Source: Epithemia pelagica (lineage: Eukaryota > Protista > Bacillariophyta). Taken from it: 64,000 nt of DNA. The position numbers and the translations under genes are program-made. Under the pieces are notes generated by a model. That model saw nothing but the letters and a program-made list of their open reading frames with translations. It searched no databases and had not been told where the DNA came from. This document shows, in pieces, positions 1-32,295 of this stretch. The stretch is from NCBI GenBank assembly GCA_946965045.2, contig OX337237.1:1-64000 (forward strand), in the 5' to 3' direction. How positions within the stretch are numbered: the stretch's first letter is position 1; the number at the start of each line of letters is the position of its first letter.

Positions 1-543
1 CCCTAACCCTAACCCTAACCCTAACCCTAACCCTAACCCTAACCCTAACCCTAACCCTAACCCTAACCCTAACCCTAACCCTAACCCTAACCCTAACCCT
101 AACCCTAACCCTAACCCTAACCCTAACCCTAACCCTAACCCTAACCCTAACCCTAACCCTAACCCTAACCCTAACCCTAACCCTAACCCTAACCCTAACC
201 CTAACCCTAACCCTAACCCTAACCCTAACCCTAACCCTAACCCTAACCCTAACCCTAACCCTAACCCTAACCCTAACCCTAACCCTAACCCTAACCCTAA
301 CCCTAACCCTAACCCTAACCCTAACCCTAACCCTAACCCTAACCCTAACCCTAACCCTAACCCTAACCCTAACCCTAACCCTAACCCTAACCCTAACCCT
401 AACCCTAACCCTAACCCTAACCCTAACCCTAACCCTAACCCTAACCCTAACCCTAACCCTAACCCTAACCCTAACCCTAACCCTAACCCTAACGATACCT
501 AACCCTAACCCTAACCCTAACCCTAACCCTAACCCCAACCCTA
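1..543. repeat. Telomeric repeat array (CCCTAA)n, i.e. TTAGGG on the minus strand; left chromosome end
   Basis: About 90 tandem CCCTAA units from base 1. Variant units lie near the junction (AACGATACCTAA at ~491-502 and CCCCAA at ~533-538), then the sequence changes abruptly to unique DNA at ~544. Confidence 0.99.
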
Positions 544-1304
544 CTAGCTGCGGTGATAGCGATTGTGACGACGAACACGATGCGACCAATGGCCAATCCA
601 TTGCAAATTTAGAAACGATACGAAAAAGTTGCCAAGCGTTGGTGGAGAACCTCCCAGAAGCCTTCCGGGATGATATTTGCAACGATGCAAAAGCCCTAGC
701 AACAATATCCACCCGACTGTGTCCAAAGGTTCCATGGCTTACCATCAGATTGGAGTTTTGCCAAGACAACTATTGCGGTCGATGGCACCAAGACTACTAC
801 GTGGCCAGGTCCATCATTACCTATGTGGGACCAGGAACCTGTGCCGCCGAAGACAAAAATGTTCAATGGGATGAGATATCGGAAACAGCTGGGGATAAAT
901 CGAACGATAGTGCCGTGGCTGAAGAGCTTGTCGTGCAGATGCCCACCAATTCGGTCCTGCTAATGAAGGGTGACTCTTGGCCTGGAATTCGTGGCAAGGG
1001 ATTGACACACAAATCTCCCACTGATTTCGACGGCGATTTTCCTCCCAAACGATTGATTCTAAAGGTTGATTTGCACAATTCGCGTCCATTGCTAGCAAAT
1101 GACGACGATCCAGTTCTAGATGATGACAGTGAGCACGACAGTGTCGACGAAAGAGAACAAAACGCCGAAGGCTCCGAGGAAAATGGCAACGATGAGGAAT
1201 CATCAAGAGAACAAACAAAGTCGAAACATAGAAGGAAACGGGAGAGGCAATCGGAAGATGAGGAGAATTCATCTGGTAGAAAATCAGTGAAAGTGAGCCC
1301 ATGA
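543..1304 (+). pseudogene. 5'-truncated DUF1826-like (2OG-Fe(II) oxygenase-like fold) coding sequence
   Basis: Motifs CGRWHQD, RSIITYVGPGT, GLTHKSP and KRLILKVD match the DUF1826 pattern as I recall it. The frame is open from the TGA at 1302-1304 back into the telomere, with no in-frame ATG before the HxD motif; the track start at 639 is a TTG. Confidence 0.7.
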
Positions 1305-5588: not shown

Positions 5589-5789
5589 TTTCACTTGAAC
5601 TTTAGGAAGGCTTTGCTATCTTGTTCGTGACACAGAGCTTTTACGTCATATGCAATTTCGTGTTTGCATGTAGAAAGACGAACGAGCCGCCATTCCCATG
5701 GGCGACGATGCTTAAATTCCGCCCAACGGTCGGATTTGGCGTATCTTTCGATGCAGTCGCACTTTGGTCTCCGTCTTCCACCGCTTATT

Positions 5790-6023
5790 TGTTGGAAAAT
5801 CCCCTTTGCCGCCTGGCGCATTCGGAACCAGGGGGGACATCTCCCGTGCGTAAGGGTTTCCCCCATGACCCACGTCACCAATGGACACTATTCACTGACG
5901 ACCCTCATACGTCAGCACCATTTGCACCCATAGCGTAACATGACCATACCTATAATTTACTCAATCCCCTTTTACGAAACTAGTTGGCCCTTTTAATCGG
6001 CAGTGACCACGGTTAAAACAACA
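5790..6023 (+). repeat. 5' LTR of copia element 1
   Basis: TGTTGGAAAATCCCC...GGTTAAAACAACA; direct repeat of 11831-12064. Confidence 0.97.
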
Positions 6024-6037
6024 CGCTTCCTCTGCGC
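6024..6037 (+). other. Putative non-canonical primer-binding site, complementary to the tRNA-iMet D-arm
   Basis: CGCTTCCTCTGCGC lies directly after the LTR. Its reverse complement GCGCAGAGGAAGCG matches eukaryotic initiator tRNA-Met nt ~10-23 (GCGCAG[C/U]GGAAGCG) at 13 of 14 positions. There is no TGG-type PBS. Confidence 0.7.
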
Positions 6038-6108: not shown

Positions 6109-7503
6109 ATGGGAGACGCGGCTGGAGCAGACGCCCAAGCACTCGTTCAAGCCTTGAACAATGCATCCGTTGCGATCCAGAACGCAATAGCGCAAGCAGC
6201 TGCCGGACCAGGAGCACCAGCTGCAGGACCATTCCTCCGTACCCCCTTGCGAGCTGGGATTGCAAACACCCTGGATTTTAGCACGAAAGAAGGCAGGAAG
6301 TACTACGAACAGGCAACGAGATCCTTATTCTCGACCGACGAGAAGTTTGATGTAGAGCCAGGCAGGTTCCAACTATTCGTGAACCTACTCCATACGCGGG
6401 CTCGCGACCTCGGAATGCTCGAGAATGGAGCCAACTGCATGGTAACAGTTCCGGCACCTCCAGGCGGAGTCGCACCACCAGCTGTCAACATGATCACGGA
6501 TTATGGACGCTTGACGTTGGAGGAAATCAAGGCCTACGAAACGACATTCATCGGACAGAACACCAGGAACTCGCAGAACTCCAAGATGCTTCATGACTTA
6601 ATCATGAACTCACTCTCACCAACCGGTATTCAACGTATCCAAATTTGGACGAATGAGACCAAGGTGAATGGGGAAGATGCAGGAGGATGCCTCTTCAAGG
6701 TCGTGATTCGCGAGAGTTACCTTGACTCTAACGCGACTGTCACTACGTTGCGACTGAACCTAACGAACCTCGATCGCTACATCGAGACGAACGGGTCCGA
6801 TATAGTCGCATTCAACGCCTACGTGCAGAGCCAAGTTGACGGTTTGGCATCCAGAGGACATACATCATTAGACCTAATCGTTAACTTGTTTAAAGGCTAC
6901 AAAGCCGTCAAGGACGACCGTTTTCAGGATTATATCCAAAAGATTGAGGATGGCCATGAAGACGGTTCAAATGTCATCACGAGCGCAAACGAATTGATGG
7001 TTCGCGCCGTCAACTTCTACAAGAAACAAGTGACGCGCGACGAATGGGAGCAACCAACCCAACACCAAAAGGAGGTACTAGCCCTCCAGGCCGAGGTACT
7101 CCACCTCAAAAAGCAGTCCAGCAAGAACAACGCGGACAAGGCAAAAGGAAAAGATGGAGTCCACAAGAAAGGCACCAAAGCAAAACTGGAGAACACCAAG
7201 CAAAAACCCGAGCGACCAGGTTGGCTCAAGGACCACACGAAGCCGAAACAGGAAAGCCTGACAAAGTACCGCACATGGAATGGTACCAAGTGGTACTGGT
7301 GCGACGAAGCCACAGGCGGCAAGTGTGGTGGCAAGTGGAGGACCCACAAGCCGGCGGATTGCAAAGGGTATGCGAAACCAGCACCGAAAACGGATGCAAA
7401 AGAAGAAAAGAAGAAGAAAGAAGCTCTGAAGATGGCAGTGGCGCATGAGACACTGATCGAGAACAGAGAACACGAGCAGGAGGACTCCGATTACGAATCG
7501 TGA
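6109..7503 (+). CDS. gag: Gag protein of copia element 1
   Basis: First ATG at 6109 (the track start 6073 is TTG). The retrotransposon gag-like core (SYLDSNATVTTLRLNL, LFKGY) is followed by a C-terminal Cys/His knuckle, WCDEATGGKCGGKWRTHKPADC. It ends at TGA 7501-7503. Confidence 0.9.
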   Translation: MGDAAGADAQALVQALNNASVAIQNAIAQAAAGPGAPAAGPFLRTPLRAGIANTLDFSTKEGRKYYEQATRSLFSTDEKFDVEPGRFQLFVNLLHTRARDLGMLENGANCMVTVPAPPGGVAPPAVNMITDYGRLTLEEIKAYETTFIGQNTRNSQNSKMLHDLIMNSLSPTGIQRIQIWTNETKVNGEDAGGCLFKVVIRESYLDSNATVTTLRLNLTNLDRYIETNGSDIVAFNAYVQSQVDGLASRGHTSLDLIVNLFKGYKAVKDDRFQDYIQKIEDGHEDGSNVITSANELMVRAVNFYKKQVTRDEWEQPTQHQKEVLALQAEVLHLKKQSSKNNADKAKGKDGVHKKGTKAKLENTKQKPERPGWLKDHTKPKQESLTKYRTWNGTKWYWCDEATGGKCGGKWRTHKPADCKGYAKPAPKTDAKEEKKKKEALKMAVAHETLIENREHEQEDSDYES

Positions 7504-10500
7504 CTCCTATGGAGAGAGTGGAAAACAGTAACAACATTAGTAACTCTGATCTTGTACATGTACGCCACTCTCTCCCTCGAAGAAATAATCACTTACCTGT
7601 GGTTATGGACCCTTGTCCAATTCCTGAAACGAACGACAACCATGATAGAAGCAGCGACAAAGCTCATCATAGTCGTTCTCCACCAGGGGGAGGAAGACGA
7701 GTCGACGACGAACAAGAAGGATTGGATGCACCACGCTATTACGATGACCAACGAGACAGTCGAAGGCATGGCAAACTGGGTAGACACGAAATTCCTGGAC
7801 ACGAAGCAAAGGAAGAAAGTGAGACCATGGCGAAAAAGAAGGGCGCGAAAGATAATATGTAGCGCTGCAATCATGGCCATGGCGGCCAGATGCGCCGCGG
7901 CAACCAACTGCCACCCATTCGACTCAGACTCAACGATGATTGGCATCGACAACAGGTGTTCGGGTTGCATCACCCACGTTCGAAGCGACATACCTGGTGC
8001 TTTGAAGCAGTGCAACAAAGCAATCAAAGGTTTTGGAGGTGCGAAAACTTATGAAGTGTGGACGGGCACCATACACTGGGACTGGGAGGATGACCAAGGA
8101 AAGATCCATACGATGGTGATTCCCAACTCGTACTATGTTCCAGAAGGTAAGGTCCGACTACTGAGCCCGCAACACTGGGCGCAGACTCGGAAAAGTAGTG
8201 AAAAGCGCGGCGGGGCGGGCGAAATGACCACAGGCACAGAAGTAGTACTATTCTGGAACGACCGTCAGTCACGAAGGACGATCCCAATAGATACACACGG
8301 CAATAATGTGGCTACGTTCCATCTCGCGAGTGGGTACAAGCAGTACCATGCCTACTGTAAAGAATGTGGGACTGAGCGCGACCGCGACTACGACAAAGAC
8401 CCATTATTACAGCATCAAGCCATGCCGTCAATGGTGGTATCCGATGACGAGGGGGAAGACGACGAGACGACCTACCCGATCCAAGCCCAACAATGGCACC
8501 AGGCCATTCCGAAACCGACGGTAGAGGCAACGCCAGACGCAGCAACCCAACAAACGGACGAAGCAGAGCCTCGCAAGTTTGACTTCGACCTGGATGGAAA
8601 GACTGCCGACGACGAAATTCCACCGCCAGACATCATCCCACACGAGGAGGAGGAACGGCCAACGGCGGAGGCAGAGTTGCTCAGGTACCACTACGACTTT
8701 GGGCACCTGCCATTCGCTAAACTACAACAAATGGCAAAGGACAGAATACTGCCGAAACGACTGGCGAATTGTCACATCCCAGTGTGCTCGGCATGCAATT
8801 TCGCCAAAGCAACGAAGCGAGCATGGCGCACAAGGTCGTCGAAAGACTGGTCGAACAAGACACCTCCAAGCAAGCCAGGCATGGTTGTGTCGGTCGACCA
8901 GTTAGTGTCGCCCACTCCAGGACTCGTGGCCCAGATGACAGGGTTCATCACGAAACAGCGCTACAGATACGCTACCGTGTATGTGGACCAAGCGACGTCA
9001 CTGGGCTTCGTTTTCCTACAGAAGACCTCAACCGTTGAAGAGACACTGCAAGGCAAGAGAGCTTTTGAGCGCTATGCCATTAACAGAGGAGTGTCAGTGC
9101 GTGCCTACCACGCCGACAACGGTATTTTTAAAGCGCACGGGTGGGTGAAGGCTTGTCATGACCAAGGACAAGACCTCACGTTCGCAGCAGTTGGCGCCCA
9201 CCACTCAAATGGAAAGGCGGAGCGCAGAATAAGAGAGTTGCAAGGGATGGCGCGCACAATGCTTTTGCACGCGAACAAGCGATGGCCACAGGCAATCACT
9301 GCCAATTTGTGGCCTTACGCCGTGCGCCATGCAAACGACTGCATTAACGCGGCCCCCAATATGCAACACGAAACGAAGCAATCGCCAATCCAACTGTTCT
9401 CTCAAACAGCCATTAACACGAACAAAAAGCACTGGAGGCCCTTTGGATGCCCAGTGTACTTGCTGGATGAACGATTGCAAGGGAACAAACCACACAATAA
9501 GTGGGAAAATCGAGCACGCGTGGGAATTTACTTGGGCCAGTCGCCAATCCACAACAGGAATGTGGCACTGGTCCTCAACCGACACACTGGGCATGTAAGT
9601 CCACAATTCCACGTACGATTCGATCGCAGTTTCCATACCCTCCATCAGGAGCAACTGACGGCAACGTGGCAAGTCAGTACATTCTTCGCTGACGCCAAAC
9701 GAACCGGACAACCGCAGAGGAGCCAGAACGGAAAACGACGGAGGAGGCACAAGGGGCAAGAGGGAGCCCCACAACACACTCCAACTGGCACTCCAACGGA
9801 CGAAGGGCAACAACAACTGCCAAACAATGTATGGCCGGATGAGGCACCCAACCAAAGTCCAACCACAGGTCCACCAGGTGGGACGCCACCACAAGCAACA
9901 CAGACTGGACGAACCATGGAACGAATGCCTCCAGTGGACTCAGAGGGAGCACACGGCCAGAGGGAGCGGCAACCCCCGCAAACAACAACAACCAACCAAA
10001 TGCGGACTAGATCGGGACGACTGCGCAAACCGACGCAACGTCTCATTGAAGTAATGTCCGCAGAGGTAGAGGATGACGCGACAATACCGGGGGAACTATT
10101 TGCTCTCTCCACCCTCACGCCGCAAGACGACATGGAGGGGGAGGACCCACTCCTGGCATACAAAGCGGCAGTCTCCGACCCGGATACAATGTATCATCAT
10201 GAGGCTATGAAAGAGCCAGACAGGGCGGAGTTTATAAAGGGCATGCAAAAGGAAATGGAGCGACAGATGGAAGATGGAAATCTATCTATCGTGCGCCGCG
10301 ATTCAGTCCCAGCAGGCCAACGCATCTTCAAGGCAGTATGGCAAATGCGCAGAAAAAGGGACATCATGACACGCGAGATCAAAACACACAAGGCAAGACT
10401 CAATTTCGATGGGTCCAAGATGGAAAAGGGCATAGACTACGACCAGACATATGCCCCAGTTGCATCGTGGGCATCCATCAGACTGGTCCTAGCTCTGGTA

Positions 10501-11790
10501 TCAGCATTCAATTGGCACACACAACAAATTGATTACGTCCTGGCATACCCACAGGCACCGGTCGAAAGGGAAGTCTATATGGAGATCCCAGTGGGGTATG
10601 ATCTGGACGAAGGAAAGTCCAAAAGAGATTATGTCCTCAAACTCCATGCCAACCTCTACGGGCAAAAACAAGCCGGTAGGGTGTGGTACCAACACCTGTC
10701 AAAGCGGTTGGTGGAGCAAGTGGGGTTCACCAAGTCGGCCGTGGATGAGTGTGTGTTCTACAGGGGCCAAGTGATCTACGTCCTCTACACTGACGATAGT
10801 ATCATCGTGGGTCCGGATCAGGCAGAGATTGACAAAGCAATCAACGATATCCGGGCAGCAAAGCTCAATATCACAGTGGAAGGAAACATCAAGGATTTCC
10901 TGGGCGTAAATATCCACAAAAGCGACAACGGAGAAATAACTTTCTCCCAACCGCACCTCATCGACAAGGTACTGAAAGGATTGCGCCTGGGATCCGACAC
11001 AGTCCCAAAGAGTACGCCCGCAGCACCGTCCAAGATACTCCATCGCCATCTGGAGAAACCACCCTTCGACAACAATTTCAACTACCGATCCATCGTCGGG
11101 ATGTTGAATTACATCGAAGCAGGGTCAAGGAGCGACATAGCGTACGCTACACACCAATGCGCACGCTTTGCCTCCAACCCTCGGAAGCCACATGGAGACG
11201 CAGTCCGATGGATTGGACGGTACCTACACGCGACACGAGACAAAGGAATGTCGTTCCGTCCAGACAAGGAGGCAGGCTTGGAAGTGTGGGTGGATGCTGA
11301 CTTCGCAGGCAACTGGAAACGCGAGGACGCAACGACAGACCGTGATACGGCAAGGTCACGACACGGGTACATAATCCGTTATATGGGTTGTCCAGTGATC
11401 TGGAAATCACAAATTCAAACGGAGATCGCCCTCAGTTCAACGGAAAGTGAGTACACAGGGATGTCGTATGCGCTACGAGCAGCCATACCAATAATGCGCT
11501 TGCTGGAAGAAATGCAACAACAAGGCATCCAAATACAACAAACGCAAGCCGAAGTCCACTGTAAAGTGTTCGAGGACAACAGTGGGGCGCTCGAGATGGC
11601 CAAGGTCTACAAGTTTCGCCCAAGGACCAAACACCTGAACGTCAAGCTCCATCACTTCCGCACCTACGTGGAGGATGGCAGCGTGACGATTCATAAAGTG
11701 GCAACAGAGGACCAACTCGCCGACTATCTCACCAAACCATTGCCGCAAGACACATTGGAACGACTGCGCAAACGAGTACTCGGATGGTAA
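7504..11790 (+). CDS. pol: Pol polyprotein (protease, integrase, RT, RNase H) of copia element 1, in frame with gag
   Basis: Protease IGIDNRCS; HHCC (YHYDFGH...CSAC); integrase SVDQ/HADNG/NGKAERR; RT YTDD; RNase H VDADFAG/ESEY/EDNSGA/ADYLTK. The frame is uninterrupted from 7504, with the first ATG at 7558. Confidence 0.96.
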   Translation, partial: LLWREWKTVTTLVTLILYMYATLSLEEIITYLWLWTLVQFLKRTTTMIEAATKLIIVVLHQGEEDESTTNKKDWMHHAITMTNETVEGMANWVDTKFLDTKQRKKVRPWRKRRARKIICSAAIMAMAARCAAATNCHPFDSDSTMIGIDNRCSGCITHVRSDIPGALKQCNKAIKGFGGAKTYEVWTGTIHWDWEDDQGKIHTMVIPNSYYVPEGKVRLLSPQHWAQTRKSSEKRGGAGEMTTGTEVVLFWNDRQSRRTIPIDTHGNNVATFHLASGYKQYHAYCKECGTERDRDYDKDPLLQHQAMPSMVVSDDEGEDDETTYPIQAQQWHQAIPKPTVEATPDAATQQTDEAEPRKFDFDLDGKTADDEIPPPDIIPHEEEERPTAEAELLRYHYDFGHLPFAKLQQMAKDRILPKRLANCHIPVCSACNFAKATKRAWRTRSSKDWSNKTPPSKPGMVVSVDQLVSPTPGLVAQMTGFITKQRYRYATVYVDQATSLGFVFLQKTSTVEETLQGKRAFERYAINRGVSVRAYHADNGIFKAHGWVKACHDQGQDLTFAAVGAHHSNGKAERRIRELQGMARTMLLHANKRWPQAITANLWPYAVRHANDCINAAPNMQHETKQSPIQLFSQTAINTNKKHWRPFGCPVYLLDERLQGNKPHNKWENRARVGIYLGQSPIHNRNVALVLNRHTGHVSPQFHVRFDRSFHTLHQEQLTATWQVSTFFADAKRTGQPQRSQNGKRRRRHKGQEGAPQHTPTGTPTDEGQQQLPNNVWPDEAPNQSPTTGPPGGTPPQATQTGRTMERMPPVDSEGAHGQRERQPPQTTTTNQMRTRSGRLRKPTQRLIEVMSAEVEDDATIPGELFALSTLTPQDDMEGEDPLLAYKAAVSDPDTMYHHEAMKEPDRAEFIKGMQKEMERQMEDGNLSIVRRDSVPAGQRIFKAVWQMRRKRDIMTREIKTHKARLNFDGSKMEKGIDYDQTYAPVASWASIRLVLALVSAFNWHTQQIDYVLAYPQAPVEREVYMEIPVGYDLDEGKSKRDYVLKLHANLYGQKQAGRVWYQHLSKRLVEQVGFTKSAVDECVFYRGQVIYVLYTDDSIIVGPDQAEIDKAINDIRAAKLNITVEGNIKDFLGVNIHKSDNGEITFSQPHLIDKVLKGLRLGSDTVPKSTPAAPSKILHRHLEKPPFDNNFNYRSIVGMLNYIEAGSRSDIAYATHQCARFASNPRKPHGDAVRWIGRYLHATRDKGMSFRPDKEAGLEVWVDADFAGNWKREDATTDRDTARSRHGYIIRYMGCPVIWKSQIQTEIALSSTESEYTGMSYALRAAIPIMRLLEEMQQQGIQIQQTQAEVHCKVFEDNSGALEMAKVYKFRPRTKHLNVKLHHFRTYVEDGSVTIHKVATEDQLADYLTKPLPQDTLERLRKRVLGW

Positions 11791-11830
11791 CGAGTGTCAC
11801 AAATGATGCAAATTGAAAAGTGAGAGGGAG

Positions 11831-12064
11831 TGTTGGAAAATCCCCTTTGCCGCCTGGCGCATTCGGAACCAGGGGGGACATCTCCCGTGCGTAAGGGTTT
11901 CCCCCATGACCCACGTCACCAATGGACACTATTCACTGACGACCCTCATACGTCAGCACCATTTGCACCCATAGCGTAACATGACCATACCTATAATTTA
12001 CTCAATCCCCTTTTACGAAACTAGTTGGCCCTTTTAATCGGCAGTGACCACGGTTAAAACAACA
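11831..12064 (+). repeat. 3' LTR of copia element 1
   Basis: Direct repeat of 5790-6023, preceded by a polypurine tract at 11815-11830. Confidence 0.97.
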
Positions 12065-12463
12065 CTTATTGCTTTGGATCCACACTTTTCCACAACATCA
12101 ACACCATCCAACATCCACCATGTTGACGAGGCGCAATAATCTCAATATTCTATTTCAAGCTGCCTCCTCTACGAGCATCATGGGCTTTTACCTACCAGGG
12201 CACATCGGTCAGCGTCCGTTTTTTGAGAAACGCGTCCCACATGCGAGAGAAAAGATCTCGGAAACCCAAAAGGCCAAAAAATGAGGCCTCTTTGTTTGTA
12301 CCTCAAAGAATAATGCCCTTTTCTATCTCATTCCCTTGCTCTCACAAAACGCGGACTTCCACTGTGTTTTGGATCCTTGAGATTGGGAATTGGAGATTTG
12401 TAACTGATTTGAATTGGAGATTGGTACGAATCCATCCTCCGCCGTCTTAGCCTCGTCGCCAAG

Positions 12464-26336: not shown

Positions 26337-29300
26337 GTCCCCTCGTGATTCGATAGTCCCTAACTACCGTAATCATGCACTTTCTCCTTCTCCTTCTATC
26401 CATTCCAACTGGACCTGCTTAAAGATCAGTTCATCATCTGACTGCAGGACGTACCCAAACCTGTTTTCCAACAGTGGGAAACGCACTTAGTACAAGATCA
26501 TCTCCGCTAGCCGCTTCCTTTCTGTGCCGGTCTGAACTTTAGTCAAGAGATCGGCAAGATTTGACTTTGATGGCTCATATGCAATTCGACATACTCCGTT
26601 TGCGACATTTTCCCTTACGAAATGATAGGCGATTGCATTCGATTTCTTGCGGAGGATGGATTCTGGTCTGGTACTGTTCTGTACCACCGACATATTATCA
26701 ACTCTGATGTGTGCATGACCGTCCAGAGGCACACCCAACATCCTCAATTTGTATCTCAAACCCTTGGTCATCTCGATACCCACTTTCAGGGCCATGAACT
26801 CAGAACCAAACGTCGAAGTCTCGACACTTGTCTGCTTCTTTGAATACCAATTTACTGGCGAACGATTTAAGAAGACCAAGACTCCCGTCCTTGAACGACG
26901 AGTCACCAAATCACCCGCGTGATCAGAATCAACAAAGACAGTAATTTGTACCGGTTTACCCAATGGTTCAGGTGCATCGGGTGGAATTTCTTCTTTTGCA
27001 TTGGGATAGAATCCGGACCAATCTGCCAATGGCTCCTCCCCATGGACAATATATGATGGATCAACACCAATCGCGACCTGTCATATTGATTGATGTAAGC
27101 GAAAACATGAAGGAGAGCATGTACATGTCCTTCTCTTGGACCAGCCAAATAAGCAGCCAACATTGAGACCTCTGTTGTTATATCGATCCTCCCGAGTTCT
27201 ACTAGCCATCGGAGAACTCCAATCTGTTGTTGAAAGAAAGATTGCCATTCTTGGTCACAGTAGGACGACGTGTCCAATTCAGGTCTGTATCCAGATGGGA
27301 GTACACCTGCTACTCTTGTCTTGAGCATCATGTCTCTTTCTTCCAGCCAAATCTTTACATTACGGATGGCTTCAGTGGCATATTTCTTTGAGCTCAATGC
27401 CCAACACCGTTTAGATACGTCGTTGTCGATGTCAAAAGTCTGAACTTCGTTTCCAAGGTAAATCTTGGGTGGACCTATTGAGTCCGGTTTCAATAGATAA
27501 TGCTGGTCAAGCATGTTGAGGATTTCACGTCCCCTGTGCGAGATTACGAGTACGTCGTCAATATAAATGAAGGCGAGTTCATAATATAAAGAACCATCTT
27601 GTTTCTTTGCTGGTCGCAAATACGTCAGGGTCAGCCTTGCAGGGCTTGAATCCCAACGATTCTTGTAGAGTTGTGGACAGGTGTTCTCTCCAGGCAAATG
27701 CACTGGTTTTGAGGCCATAGAGCGCTTTTGTTATTACTGCGTAACGTCCTTCGTACTCTTTTCCAAATTCGAGACCGCAGAGTGTACAAATCTTTTCGTG
27801 ACATGGGGCATTGAGATAAGCCCCGGCTATATCTGCGGCCGTCACGTCCACTCCATTCAATGCTGCCAACATGAACCCAATTCTCACACTTTCCCTGGAG
27901 ACAACGCTCGCATAGGTCGGTGTTTTGGGCTCTCCAGTCTTGTGGCCACCTGCAACATATCTTGCCTTTCGCGTAAAGTCCATCTTTACGTCAAATACGA
28001 TATGGCAGGGGATTACTTTGTGACCAACGGGCTGTGGCATTCCCTCATCCAGTACCTTTACTGCTGGGAATATCTTTGACATTTCAAGTTGCAATGCCTT
28101 GGCCCAGAAATCAGTGCCGGTCTCTCGGTCAATCTCCAACGCCCTTTCTACTGTTTTGGGCAGTTCGATACCGTATTTTTGTGATTTGCGGAAATATCGA
28201 GTCGACTTGGCCGCCTTGATCAGTCGATCCCGTCGCTTCAGAGCGAAAGCGACCCACCATGCAAATGCTGGCTCCTTGTCTATAAGGTTGGCCACAGCAT
28301 ATTCCACTACTTCCAAGGGATTGGATTCCTTGAGATCTTGCAACTTTTCCCAAGACGTTGACCCGTCTTTCCATTCGACACACAATGACCAACCTCTGGT
28401 AGTTCTTTTCTTATGCTCCCTCCCGTTCCAATGGAAAGTACCATCTGAGATAGAGATGGCCGATGCATCTTTCTTGTGATCAACGATACTGCTCAGGAGC
28501 CGATACTTATTGCCCTCTTCGTCAAGTTGTTCGTAGATGTTTTCCGCGATAAGGTTTGCCGCGTAAGACTCCACGTGACCATCTTGAAATTCGAGCTCGT
28601 ACATGGTCGTGTCTAGAATAGGGTTCGTTGAAGGTCGTCCAATGAGGTTGCCGTCTGCATTTCTTTTCCTTCGCTTGACCTGCCCCTGACGCAATGATCC
28701 TCCTAAAGGTAGCATGACTTTCGCTGCAATGAGCTTGTCATAGGAATCTGTCTTGTATTGGTCTAGGTCAGGCTTCCGGACATCTTCCTGTTCATCATCC
28801 TCATATGCGTCGTAAAAAGGAGTATCCGTTCCATCTTCATCGGGTTCTCCTTGTTCTATCGGCATTCCTTCAAACCTTGCACCCAATACGGCTTTTAAAT
28901 TAGCATCAAATTGTTCCCGCTGTGCTGTGAAGGTTTCATCGTGTGATTTCTCCGAAGACAGGGGCCAAACCGACGTCCTGTATATAATCTTTCCTTTATC
29001 AGTTAGGACTTTCGAGCTCATGGCTTGACCCACGCTTCGACTAGGTCCGAGCCATCGTCCCAACTTTCGACCTTCAAACCCAGGATTGGAGTACCAAACC
29101 GGGTCGTAACACCGATGTTCCACTAAGTGGGAAATATCGGGTGTGTCCCCTGTCAACATAGTTAGGGGTGGACCGGTATTGAATGGACTAGTCGACAAGA
29201 CTGTGTGAGATCGCCTTGCTGCCATTAGTTCAAGGCAGTGATCCATGAGGACTGAGGGACAATTAGTCCTTCTCATTTCACGGCGATACATCCTTTTTAG

Positions 29301-32295
29301 TTCCGGAATATTGGCTTCAGCCAGATTCTGGTTAGGAGTGTATGCCTCAATTGGTTTGATCCGGCAGCTGAACTTGTGCGCCGTCTTTCTGAAGTTACCG
29401 CTTGTTAACTCAGGTGCATTGTCAGGTATGACACTATTAAAGATGCCATAGTCACTGAATACTCTTTCAAGTGTCTTATGTGCATCCTTCTTTCGTTGCA
29501 TGGGATAGAACTCTACCCATCCAAAATCTGTCGCGTACACTTGTCCGCATGTATTCTGACCAAGTGACTTGACGTCTGAAAAGAGGGTATCTGTGTAGAC
29601 GTCCGCTCTTAACCGTCTATGCTTTAGCTGACACGCTGTATGGCGTAATCTCTTGCTTCCAATGGAGTCAGTAAAGTCTCGTACTCCCAATTGCGTTGTG
29701 GCCGAACAAGTCTTCTCAGCCAATGGAATGCCTATTCCCCATCTTCTTGATAGAGTCACAGGATCCACAGTCCCCTTTCGACGATGCCTCAAATCAGCGA
29801 TCGTCCTTGTGTTTACCCGAACCATTCGGGCCATCCTTTGATGCAAGTCTCTTGATTCTTTCTTTCGAATTGTATCTGTTTCTAAATCGACACGGAGTTT
29901 CCTTTCGTCGGCATCTGCCAAGTCATTCGGATCCCACTCCGGTGTGTCGTAAGTCATATGGATCCTGTTGCTCGGATCTATATTTTAATTTCATCCCAAG
30001 TTGGTTTCCTTACTGTGAAGGAGCTCATTACACCAACTAAGTCGAATGGGATGACAAGATGGTCACTTTCATCTGAGAAAGGAGCTATGATCGAATGCGA
30101 GTGACTGTTCCTGTCCTCACTCTTGATATATTTTAGAGGAACGTCATTCACTTTGACTCCTGCTTCTCTCATCTGGTTGGGGTTTAACAAGCATTTATTC
30201 ATCATCGGCAGATGGAGGGCCTGATGAAAATATAAGAGGTATGTTTCATTTGATTTGGGGTCGTCGTAGGCGACTACTCCAGTGATGATTGGAGTTTCTT
30301 TGATGCTTCCAAGTGAATTCGTAAATCCACTAACTTCTGCTTTGCCTGTCGTATATAGAACCAGACAGACATCTCCAAGGCAGCAAGTGTCCGCGTGACT
30401 ATCCAATTCACACGTTGCCGTCATAGCAGTTATTTCACTTGCTACCGTGCTGACTCTGTGTCAGACTCGGTCATTTCGCTTCTTCCTTTGGCTCATGATA
30501 GCACCAATGCCAGCTTCTCTATCTTCAGAGGAGTCATCTCCGTTACTTGTCGAATCTTCTGTCGTATCTGTTGCCGACGATAAGCCGTCATTATTCTTCC
30601 TTTTCTTCTTGCTCGAGTTTACCCCTGATGCAGTACGTTTCTTGGTACTGCTATTTTGCTTGTCTCGCGAGTCTCGAACCAATTGTTGTTGCTCAGGTGT
30701 GAGCTTTACCCATAACTTGTAAGGATAGTACTTGTTAGGGTTGTTCGGATCGAATTTGGTTGGGGTATTCTTATTGTTCCCTTTATTGTTTTTCTTGTTA
30801 CCGCTTGATTGGATAGCGGAAATCCTGGCCCTTCTCGTAGTAGCACTGTAGGAAACCTTGTTGTCTAGTACTTCTGCAAGATAACCTGATGCCACCTCAA
30901 ACGAGATTCGGAGATTTGGGGATGCTAGGATCTGATTCTTGGCACTCTCAAGTCGCGTATCATGAATACCCGTGAGAAGAATACGGATCTTCCTTTCTTC
31001 ACTCACGAATTCTCCTGTGGAATCGAGATCAGAAAAGGCCTTCTGCAAGGACTCAATATATTTCTCGTAGGTAAAGTTACGTTTTGAGCCGTCGTAATAG
31101 TTTGTCTCCAACGTTTGGTCTGCCTTCGCTCGCAAACGAGTCTGATAGGCATCTCCGAAGTAGTGATTTCTGAGGGCTCTGTAGGTTCCTCTGCCATCCC
31201 TGTTACGGCTGTACATCTGTACCCAGCCCCATCCAGGTCCATCATGGGTTCCATGCCTGACTGCGTCCCATACTGCTTCATTGTCGGTTAGGGCTGTTGG
31301 TCCTGTGTACGGTGCTCTTCGCACAAGCTCTTGGATTATACTTGGCCGACCATAGCCCGGATCAAGATTCAGAGGTGGTACTGTGTTGAGTGGACGAGTG
31401 TAAGCGGCCAAGGGAATGCCAGTTACTCCTCTCTTTCTTTCGAAGTAATCGTCCAAATCTTCCAGTGCGGTTCAGATATTTTCAACTGCAGTCAGCTTCT
31501 CGGGCAGTTCAATGTCGTTGTTCTTGTACTCGTCTTCACTTTCCTTGAATCGATATAGGTCTTGAAGATTTGGTAGCAATGAGGCAGGTGCAGCAGGGTC
31601 AAAAGGACGTGAGACTTTCATCAAATGATGAATGTAGTATCTCATCATCTTCAATCGCTTCTCGATTACATGGCCCACTAACACTCCTGGATTCGTAATG
31701 GTAGGGGCTATGCCGACAACCGGGTTGCCGAGGAAGTCGCTCGCTGACAGTAAGCTCTGAGCATGCAGAGCATCTCGAACTGTTTGCTGTTGAATCTGTA
31801 ACGTATTCAACCAGTAGTCATCTAGCTCTTGGAGCAGAGCTGCGGCATCGGGTGCTGCCATGGTTCAAATAGATCTTTCTTGATGGACTCTCTCAGACTT
31901 TCCAGTATTCGGAACTGTGTGCGTCGTGCGCACCTTACCTTCATTCATTCATTGAAGTAGATACATGAGCGATCACCAAGGTAGAGAGCGTGCACAGCTG
32001 CATTATCGTCCCGCGCCACATAAGTGGTTAAAACGCATGGTCGCATGGCAGGCTTTTTCTTTTCAACGGCAAAGAACAGGCGCGTCCGCCATTGCCCAGG
32101 GTGTGCGCAGTAGCAGTCCACACCCCTCACTAGTCCGGTCTGGCTCCGTTGCAAGTCAGATATTCAACGAGACTAGATCCTTGGGCGGATCATATGGACC
32201 TACTTAGTCCGATCCGGATATTTCTTGACCTTCCCAGGCCATTGTGCCCTTAGCTCCTTTTCTTCTTCCTCTTCAGCTCAGAGTCATTGGGTCCC
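26337..32295 (-). mobile_element. Decayed Ty1/copia retrotransposon 2 (different lineage from element 1); ends uncertain
   Basis: Minus-strand gag, protease (ELDSHADTCC), integrase (TDTLF/PDNA/NLAE), WKDG..SWE..EPAFAWW segment, RT (YIDD) and RNase H (VDSDHAG...ADLLTK). A PPT-like ATCACGAGGGGAC ends near 26337. No LTR pair was found. Confidence 0.85.
26487..31861 (-). pseudogene. Disrupted gag-pol of copia element 2
   Basis: In-frame TGA at 31472-31474 and 30461-30463, plus frameshifts near 29980, 27620 and 27060. These split one polyprotein into the track ORFs 31472..31861, 30461..31456, 29978..30424, 27579..29957, 26903..27718 and 26487..27029. Confidence 0.9.

What the first reader, a model, noticed from the sequence alone, without database searches (positions are those of the whole stretch)
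6022..6037. Retrotransposon PBS complementary to the D-arm of initiator tRNA-Met, suggesting priming by a short 5' tRNA fragment
Seen: the 5' LTR is followed immediately by CGCTTCCTCTGCGC, not by TGG. Its reverse complement (GCGCAGAGGAAGCG, extending to GCGCAGAGGAAGCGTG if the LTR-terminal CA is included) matches tRNA-iMet nt ~10-23/25. The single difference is at a D-loop position that differs between human (C) and yeast (U). Established: most LTR elements use the tRNA 3' CCA end, while Drosophila copia and yeast Ty5 use a tRNA-iMet half cut in the anticodon stem. Inference: this element needs a primer whose 3' end lies in the D-stem, a ~23-25 nt 5' tRNA fragment. I do not know this priming mode from described elements. 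It would tie transposition to tRNA-fragment production, which is often stress-induced.
Basis: partly seen in the sequence, partly recalled or inferred. Interest (0 to 1): 0.85.

Follow-up and report, generated by a model that had tools for sequence, protein, structure and literature searches.

The report
Retrotransposon primed from tRNA-iMet D-arm
A young, intact copia-type jumping gene in this probable diatom genome has a primer-binding site that pairs perfectly with the D-arm (bases 10-23) of the host's own initiator tRNA instead of the tRNA's 3' end. A whole clade of diatom elements shares this site, which points to a 23-base 5' tRNA fragment as primer, a variant of copia/Ty5 half-tRNA priming that I could not find described.

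Summary
The window holds an intact Ty1/copia element: LTRs 5790-6023 and 11831-12064 (100% identical), a 6-bp target duplication CTTATT, and gag and pol open.

- **The match.** The 14 bases right after the 5' LTR (6024-6037) are the exact complement of bases 10-23 of the host's only two initiator tRNA-Met genes. The match runs 5 bases further into the LTR end, 19 in all.
- **Within the genome.** The 14-mer occurs 69 times: 2 tRNA genes and 67 sites directly after an LTR end, in 8 copia families whose pol falls to 39% identity.
- **Other diatoms.** The same site follows the LTR in Chaetoceros tenuissimus and, with one change at a naturally variable D-loop position, in Cylindrotheca closterium. 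It also appears in several metagenome and transcript contigs. These elements form one RT clade.
- **Rivals.** Self-priming, a tRNA 3' end and a second tRNA contact were tested and rejected.
- **Context.** About 80 other copia sites in the same genome carry the classical copia/Ty5-type site against the anticodon stem-loop. Both site types stop just before a base that is RT-blocking in yeast tRNA-iMet (m1G9, m2,2G26).

The primer itself is inferred, not observed, because no RNA data exist for this organism. The link to stress is speculation. First-stage readers noted the same idea on two other pieces of this genome (s1-256979, s1-248303).

The parts
5784..5789 (+). Target-site duplication, left copy (CTTATT)
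   Evidence: The same 6 bases follow the 3' LTR at 12065-12070. All five sister families checked also have a 6-bp duplication.
5790..6023 (+). 5' LTR, 234 bp, TGTTGG...AACAACA; TATA-like CTATAATTT near 5950
   Evidence: 100% identical to 11831-12064. The boundaries were fixed by the 6-bp duplication logic.
6019..6037 (+). Full 19-base stretch complementary to initiator tRNA-Met bases 10-28 (last 5 bases of U5 plus the PBS)
   Evidence: Exact-complement scan of the element against the host tRNA.
6024..6037 (+). Primer-binding site CGCTTCCTCTGCGC, complementary to initiator tRNA-Met bases 10-23 (canonical 10-24, the D-arm)
   Evidence: Predicted duplex with the tRNA is -28.9 kcal/mol, against about -12 with the element's own LTR, which equals the shuffled level.
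6109..7503 (+). gag-like ORF (464 aa from ATG 6109), ends in TGA at 7501-7503
   Evidence: ORF list. It has no Pfam hit and 78 homologues, all upstream of copia pol genes where checked.
7504..11790 (+). pol ORF in the same frame as gag, behind the single TGA: gag_pre-integrase, integrase SH3, then RVT_2, which is the Ty1/copia order
11822..11830 (+). Polypurine tract GAGAGGGAG, abutting the 3' LTR
   Evidence: Read. (G/T)GAGGGAG precedes the 3' LTR in all sister families.
11831..12064 (+). 3' LTR
12065..12070 (+). Target-site duplication, right copy (CTTATT)

Best explanation
Bases 6024-6037 are the minus-strand primer-binding site of an intact, recently inserted Ty1/copia retrotransposon of a probable diatom.

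**Proposed mechanism**
- The site pairs with bases 10-23 of the host initiator tRNA-Met, which is the whole D-arm (canonical 10-24).
- Reverse transcription starts from a 3'-OH at tRNA base G23, so the primer is the first 23 bases of the tRNA.
- How that end is made is open. It could be a pre-existing 5' fragment, or a whole tRNA that anneals and is then cut by RNase P, as proposed for copia/Ty5, or by the element's RNase H, as in Tf1.
- When the plus strand later copies the primer to rebuild the site, it probably stops at G9. G9 is N1-methylated in yeast initiator tRNA, and this would explain why the site is exactly 14 bases.

**Shown:** the complementarity, its position, its conservation across families and genera, the absence of alternatives, and the position of the first DNA base deduced from the 3' LTR end.

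**Inferred:** the fragment itself, the nuclease, and the m1G9 stop.

This is a positional variant of the half-tRNA priming of Drosophila copia and yeast Ty5, and it characterises a whole clade of diatom copia elements.
For: - **Perfect match.** 14/14 complementarity (19/19 with the U5 end) to both host initiator tRNA genes, the only sense copies of the 14-mer in 60.5 Mb.
- **Position.** The site abuts the LTR with no spacer in every family, and LTR ends are fixed by 6-bp target duplications.
- **Spread within the genome.** 67 sites in 8 families whose pol is 39-59% identical to this one. A search of family A that did not use the site found 12 of 13 copies intact.
- **Spread across diatoms.** The same 14-mer follows the LTR in Chaetoceros tenuissimus (LTRs 99.5% identical) and in contigs from ENA, JGI, Logan and NCBI, with gag down to 29-36% identity.
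- **Possible covariation.** Three Cylindrotheca closterium elements from two families all carry the same single change, opposite D-loop position 20. Environmental initiator tRNA genes show A/C/U/G at that position.
- **One clade.** All 8 D-arm elements sampled form one RT clade (support 95/99), apart from copia elements with the anticodon-stem site.
- **Parallel class in the same genome.** About 80 sites have ...CA|GGTTATGAGCCCAA, complementary to tRNA bases 26-39, as in copia/Ty5. That site ends just before G26, and the D-arm site ends just before G9. Both are 14 bases.
- **Modification enzymes.** The host encodes a Trm10-type m1G9 methyltransferase homologue (E 5e-46 to 4jwh) and a Trm1-family gene.
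Against: - No primer has been observed. No RNA or small-RNA run exists for this organism.
- Neither the tRNA modifications of diatom initiator tRNA nor the nuclease is known.
- The 5-base extension into U5 may only reflect the TGTTG...CAACA termini common to Ty1/copia LTRs (PMC4139406). It is not kept in all families: TCACA, TACA and TTCA also occur.
- The covariation with C. closterium tRNA is a prediction, because its tRNA gene could not be fetched.
- The literature check covers only open-access text. An older description in subscription journals or Repbase cannot be excluded.
Confidence: 0.78

Rival explanations
1. Tf1-like self-priming. The 14-mer pairs with the 5' end of the element's own transcript, which is then cut to give the primer. 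Earlier scan notes report this for other copia families of this genome.
For: Earlier notes s1-226337 and s1-252152 report self-priming copia families in the same genome. I did not check those families.
Against: In six families, the longest Watson-Crick run between the LTR and the site is 4-7 bases, and the duplex energy equals that of shuffled LTRs. The sense 14-mer occurs nowhere in the genome outside the two tRNA genes.
Confidence: 0.02
2. The 14-mer binds the initiator tRNA, or a fragment of it, for another purpose such as packaging, translation control or silencing by tRNA fragments. The true primer would be something else.
For: Ty1 and Ty3 use extra contacts with tRNA D- and T-arms outside the primer site (PMC5371799). 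tRNA fragments are known to target primer-binding sites.
Against: The site sits exactly where a primer-binding site must be, flush with U5, in all families. No other tRNA complement of 8 bases or more is conserved anywhere in the elements, and none matches the tRNA 3' end. The 3'-end site TGGTAGCGGTTCG occurs once in the genome, which is below the control level. Without this site the elements would have no primer site at all.
Confidence: 0.08
3. A chance or convergent conserved motif, for example an integrase or packaging signal next to the LTR end, that merely resembles the tRNA.
For: LTR termini are conserved for integrase, and CAACA is common to Ty1/copia elements (PMC4139406).
Against: The 14 bases lie outside the LTR. 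They match the host's own tRNA at 14/14, including the host-specific D-loop base A16. They stay invariant while flanks and proteins diverge to 29-39% identity. A sister class in the same genome matches another part of the same tRNA.
Confidence: 0.03
4. Same site and same tRNA, but specifically a pre-made, stress-induced 5' tRNA fragment (tRF-5b class) is recruited, so that transposition is gated by tRNA-fragment production.
For: tRNA fragments, including D-loop-associated ones, exist in Phaeodactylum. There, most Met-CAT small-RNA reads fall outside the 18-20 and 31-35 nt classes (PMC4247016, Table S3). CoDi elements are stress-induced (PMC2806351).
Against: Stress nucleases of the RNase A/T2 type leave 2',3'-cyclic phosphate ends that cannot prime (established biochemistry). 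For copia/Ty5 the favoured model is cleavage by RNase P (PMC5371799). The 19-base duplex reaching past the cut site fits cutting after annealing at least as well. No data exist for the initiator tRNA specifically.
Confidence: 0.25

Closest known systems
Drosophila copia and yeast Ty5 'half-tRNA' priming (also 1731 and Candida zeta/Tca5-type elements)
   Same: A Ty1/copia element whose site lies flush with the 5' LTR and is complementary to an internal stretch of the initiator tRNA-Met, so the primer must be a 5' fragment of that tRNA (PMC5371799, PMC4139406). About 80 copia sites in this same genome carry exactly this classical type.
   Different: There the pairing is with the anticodon stem-loop and the primer is about 39 bases. 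Here the pairing is with the D-arm (bases 10-23) and the primer is 23 bases, cut inside the D-stem. The elements form a separate RT clade.
Canonical tRNA 3'-end priming (Ty1, Ty3, plant copia, GalEa, retroviruses)
   Same: A host tRNA is used, often the initiator tRNA-Met. The site adjoins U5 and is rebuilt by copying the primer up to a modified base.
   Different: There is no TGG and no complement to the acceptor 3' strand anywhere in the element. GalEa elements use TGGTAGCAGAGC (PMC3587641).
Tf1/sushi self-priming
   Same: A non-canonical primer whose 3' end is made by an internal cut. In-situ cutting by RNase H is a possible route here too.
   Different: The primer there is the element's own 5' end. 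No such complementarity exists here.
CoDi (diatom copia) lineages of Phaeodactylum and Thalassiosira
   Same: Copia elements with a diatom host. The named pol homologues are from diatoms.
   Different: Membership in a named CoDi group was not tested, because no reference sequences were at hand. The paper that describes CoDi says nothing about primer sites (PMC2806351).

Membership tests
Ty1/copia (Pseudoviridae) LTR retrotransposon | Direct LTRs ending TG...CA with a target-site duplication | tested here: met
   234-bp LTRs, 100% identical, TGTTGG...AACAACA, flanked by CTTATT. The duplication is 6 bp rather than the usual 5.
Ty1/copia (Pseudoviridae) LTR retrotransposon | pol order with integrase before reverse transcriptase, and RT of the RVT_2 type | tested here: met
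   gag_pre-integrs at residues 373-419, integrase SH3 at 624-693, RVT_2 at 919-1156 with E 6e-39.
Ty1/copia (Pseudoviridae) LTR retrotransposon | Polypurine tract abutting the 3' LTR | tested here: met
   GAGAGGGAG at 11822-11830, conserved in sister families.
copia/Ty5-type half-tRNA priming | Site flush with the LTR and complementary to an internal part of the initiator tRNA-Met | tested here: met
   14/14 to tRNA bases 10-23.
copia/Ty5-type half-tRNA priming | The complementary part is the anticodon stem-loop, with a primer of about 39 bases | tested here: not met
   Pairing is with the D-arm. The anticodon-stem type GGTTATGAGCCCAA is present in other families of this genome but not in this element.
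copia/Ty5-type half-tRNA priming | A tRNA fragment is physically attached to strong-stop cDNA | not testable with these tools
   No RNA or cDNA data exist for this organism.
Tf1-like self-priming elements | Site complementary to the first bases of the element's own transcript | tested here: not met
   LTR-to-site pairing equals the shuffled level, and the longest run is 5 bases in this element.
Canonical 3'-end tRNA priming | Site begins with TGG and continues as the complement of a tRNA acceptor 3' strand | tested here: not met
   No TGG at the junction. No complement of 8 bases or more to tRNA bases 60-75 in six elements. The genome-wide initiator 3'-end site has 1 hit against 10 control hits.

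The most novel reading that the evidence does not exclude
A clade of copia retrotransposons, spread across centric and pennate diatoms, starts reverse transcription from the first 23 bases of the initiator tRNA, with the 3' end cut inside the D-stem. This would be a fourth, undescribed way of priming, beside the tRNA 3' end, the anticodon-stem half-tRNA and self-priming. The length of the site would be set by the m1G9 modification. In one genome this mode coexists with the half-tRNA mode (shown here) and self-priming (earlier notes), giving a natural system for studying how primer choice evolves and whether tRNA cutting limits transposition.
Probability: 0.55. Interest if true: 0.72.

Novelty: new variant of a known kind. 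Interest (0 to 1): 0.64.

Why it matters
Primer choice is a defining step of retroelement replication, and only a few solutions are known.

- **Flexible cut site.** A site against the D-arm shows that the cut that turns the initiator tRNA into a primer can lie at a second position. That constrains models of how such primers are made (RNase P, RNase H or Dicer).
- **Annotation.** Tools that look only for tRNA 3' ends will score these abundant diatom elements as lacking a primer site.
- **Testable predictions.** The primer should be a 23-base RNA ending ...GAAGCG-3'OH. Elements should track their host's D-loop base 20.
- **Diatom biology.** Copia elements are the main, stress-responsive mobile DNA of diatoms. 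Knowing their primer opens a handle on their control, including possible interference by tRNA fragments.

Tried and rejected
- **GalEa lead.** My recollection that GalEa copia elements use a D-arm site was wrong. They use the tRNA-Met 3' end (PMC3587641), and fungal GalEa have a hairpin instead (PMC5445492).
- **CoDi paper.** It does not mention primer sites.
- **Literature search by sequence.** Searching for the 14-mer and its human- and yeast-type variants found only Northern-probe uses, no transposon paper. Four more keyword searches found no D-arm priming. The 5' tRNA fragment paper in Arabidopsis concerns a different idea. Ke et al. 1999 on Ty5 is not held.
- **Self-priming, a 3'-end site and a second tRNA contact.** All were tested and rejected.
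- **Sequencing runs.** Only four coded runs kept as contigs, none on record as RNA. The fragment could not be sought, and read laying was not used because contigs cannot show RNA ends.
- **Metagenome scan for initiator tRNA genes.** It showed that D-loop position 20 varies, but among the first 80 loci there was no gene combining G20 with the diatom-type UGUU. The C. closterium tRNA gene itself could not be reached with these tools, and none lies on the fetched contigs.
- **Phaeodactylum small-RNA table.** It lumps all Met-CAT reads together and gives no positions, so it is only a lead.
- **Second RVT_2 ORF in the window (27582-29957).** It has no LTR pair and was not pursued.
- **Host identity.** I did not confirm 'diatom' from a housekeeping gene. 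The label rests on diatom-named homologues, TTAGGG telomeres and earlier notes.

Full report
**1. The observation**

Window 6022-6037 reads CACGCTTCCTCTGCGC. A 235-base direct repeat, 100% identical, lies at 5790-6024 and 11831-12065.

In five sister families the bases flanking the LTR pair are duplicated over 6 bp, and the LTR has the form TGTT...ACA. In the window the same logic gives a duplication CTTATT at 5784-5789 and 12065-12070, with LTRs at 5790-6023 and 11831-12064. The 14-mer CGCTTCCTCTGCGC therefore begins at the first base after the LTR. No TGG lies at the junction.

**2. The element**

- Between the LTRs lie a gag-like ORF (ATG at 6109, stop TGA at 7501-7503) and a pol ORF that continues in the same frame to 11790.
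- pol carries gag_pre-integrase, the integrase SH3 domain and RVT_2 in the Ty1/copia order.
- A polypurine tract GAGAGGGAG abuts the 3' LTR.
- Identical LTRs and open frames indicate a recent insertion.
- The element sits about 5 kb from a CCCTAA telomere repeat at the start of the contig, between a GT43 glycosyltransferase gene and a ferric-reductase gene.

**3. The host tRNA**

A pattern search of the window's own 60.5-Mb genome for GCGCAGNGGAAGCG gave 69 hits, all with N = A, against 0 and 1 for the reversed control. Two hits lie in tRNA-Met genes, and a search with the tRNA sequence shows these are the only two such genes.

Their sequence has the marks of a eukaryotic initiator: A1:U72, GGG/CCC in the anticodon stem, and the T-loop AUCGAAA. 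The 14-mer is bases 10-23 of the tRNA, which is canonical 10-24 because position 17 is absent. This covers the entire D-arm.

The site is thus a 14/14 complement of the host's own initiator tRNA, including the host-specific A in the D-loop. The complement continues through the LTR-terminal CAACA, giving 19 bases in all, tRNA 10-28.

**4. Conservation**

- **Within the genome.** The other 67 hits all lie directly after an LTR-like end and fall into 8 families by their flanks. The window's family has 12 copies. Families C to H have pol proteins 39-59% identical to the window's. Family B has a gag 74% identical.
- **Search blind to the site.** A search for family-A junctions that left the 14 bases free found 13 junctions. 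Twelve have the exact site and one has a single change.
- **Outside this genome.** gag and pol homologues were traced to their contigs. The exact 14-mer follows the LTR in:
  - a full-length element of Chaetoceros tenuissimus with 99.5% identical LTRs;
  - two ENA assemblies;
  - a diatom contig filed in a cyanobacterial MAG;
  - JGI and Logan contigs whose gag is only 36% identical.
- **Variants.** Three Cylindrotheca closterium elements from two families all read CGCTCCCTCTGC(G/C)(C/A). They share a T-to-C change at the fifth base. One ENA contig has A at the same base. That base pairs with D-loop position 20.
- **Natural variation of position 20.** A metagenome scan for initiator tRNA genes with the D-loop AGAGGNA found A, C, U and G there, at 49, 29, 9 and 3. 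The site seems to track the host tRNA, but the C. closterium tRNA could not be fetched, so this stays a prediction.
- **Phylogeny.** In an RT tree the eight D-arm elements form one clade (support 95/99), apart from two copia elements of the same genome that have the other site type. The sample is small and the root is at the midpoint.

**5. Rivals**

- **Self-priming.** Across six families the longest Watson-Crick run between the LTR and the site is 4-7 bases, and duplex energies equal those of shuffled LTRs. The tRNA duplex is -28.9 kcal/mol.
- **Another RNA.** The sense 14-mer exists only in the two tRNA genes.
- **tRNA 3' end.** There is no TGG. No complement of 8 bases or more to tRNA bases 60-75 exists in any of six elements, and there is no conserved second contact. 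The initiator 3'-end site occurs once in the genome, below the control count.

**6. Where the primer must end**

This follows from the established scheme of LTR-element reverse transcription. The right end of the finished DNA is the first base added to the primer. The 3' LTR carries the complete ...CAACA followed by the duplication. So synthesis starts opposite 6023, and the primer 3'-OH is at tRNA base 23, or a base or two further 5' if the ends are trimmed.

A longer primer ending at base 28 would give a 3' LTR lacking CAACA, which is not what is seen. The 5-base extension of pairing into U5 is therefore not part of the primer as extended. It may help to position an in-situ cut. It may also simply reflect the TGTTG...CAACA termini typical of Ty1/copia (PMC4139406). 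Two families here end in TCACA, and external ones end in TACA or TTCA.

**7. A parallel class and the length of the site**

The complement of the tRNA anticodon stem-loop, GTTATGAGCCCAA, occurs 82 times: 2 tRNA genes and about 80 other sites. The six sites read, and two elements read in full, show ...CA|GGTTATGAGCCCAA right after an LTR in copia elements whose pol is 35-37% identical to the window's. This is the classical copia/Ty5 arrangement (PMC5371799).

That site ends just before G26, and the D-arm site ends just before G9. Both are 14 bases. In yeast initiator tRNA these two positions are m2,2G26 and m1G9 (from my own knowledge of the yeast tRNA sequence). Both block reverse transcriptase, in the way m1A58 sets the 18-base site of retroviruses.

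The host encodes a clear Trm10-type G9 methyltransferase homologue and a Trm1-family gene. In 15 families the base after the D-arm site is never the C that would pair with G9. The modification stop is an inference.

**8. Known or new?**

A 2017 review lists three modes: the tRNA 3' end (with bipartite sites in Ty1 and Ty3), the half-tRNA of copia and Ty5, and Tf1 self-priming (PMC5371799). Candida elements use internal parts of tRNA-Arg or the initiator tRNA (PMC4139406). GalEa elements use the 3' end, and fungal GalEa a hairpin. The paper that defined diatom CoDi elements does not treat primer sites.

No open-access paper holds this 14-mer in a transposon context, and keyword searches found no D-arm priming. 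I therefore rate it a new variant of a known kind. The reservation is that subscription literature and Repbase could not be searched.

First-stage readers of this scan noted the same idea on two other pieces of this genome (s1-256979, s1-248303), without follow-up. Other notes report self-priming copia families in the same genome (s1-226337, s1-252152), which I did not verify.

**9. What is missing**

No RNA run exists for this organism, so neither the fragment nor the transcript start could be examined.

Phaeodactylum small-RNA data show that tRNA fragments exist in diatoms, including D-loop-associated ones. Most Met-CAT reads there fall outside the 18-20 and 31-35 nt classes (PMC4247016). 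The table gives no positions and does not separate initiator from elongator.

Typical stress nucleases leave cyclic-phosphate ends that cannot prime.

Noticed in passing
G000, e.g. L079-L084, L222 (C1:256300-264500), L223 (C1:1436300-1444500): About 80 sites in the same genome carry the copia/Ty5-type site GGTTATGAGCCCAA (complement of initiator tRNA bases 26-39) flush with an LTR end. Two of these elements, read in full, are copia elements. So at least two internal-tRNA priming positions coexist in one genome.
   Followed up: partly
L223 (reverse strand), just after its site: After GGTTATGAGCCCAA this family continues ACGCTACCGCTGG. This still resembles the D-arm complement ACGCTTCCTCTGCG (about 11 of 14) if the base opposite G26 is skipped, and the first two mismatches fall at D-loop positions 16 and 20. 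It may be an intermediate between the two site types, or an auxiliary contact.
   Followed up: no
window 7501-7503; also L087, L088, L089, L093, L094: gag and pol are in the same frame, separated by a single stop (here TGA followed by CTC CTA). This suggests Gag-Pol is made by stop-codon readthrough rather than frameshifting.
   Followed up: no
window 5784-5789 / 12065-12070; L070-L075: The target-site duplication is 6 bp in the window's family and in all five sister families with an LTR pair, not the 5 bp usual for Ty1/copia.
   Followed up: partly
window 1-545: The contig starts with a CCCTAA telomere repeat. The element lies about 5 kb from the chromosome end.
   Followed up: no
window 27582-29957 (-): A second RVT_2 ORF of 792 aa has no detectable LTR pair within 22-40 kb. 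It is probably a degraded copia fragment.
   Followed up: partly
L069 (G000:C1:356300-364900): This family-B copy is interrupted in gag by a nested, very divergent copia element (RVT_2, repeats of 159 bases or more). Its primer site was not examined.
   Followed up: no
L087 (GCA_010672925.1, JAAHFP010000134.1): A 6.4-kb contig filed under a Symploca (cyanobacterium) MAG carries a diatom-type copia element with the D-arm site. It is probably eukaryotic contamination of the MAG.
   Followed up: no
L089-L092 (JGI 3300009023/3300009006, Logan SRR27504714/SRR27504675): Many homologous contigs are about 6 kb long and begin 11-82 bases upstream of the site. They look like assembled full-length transcripts, which would mean that elements of this clade are expressed in the environment.
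   Followed up: no
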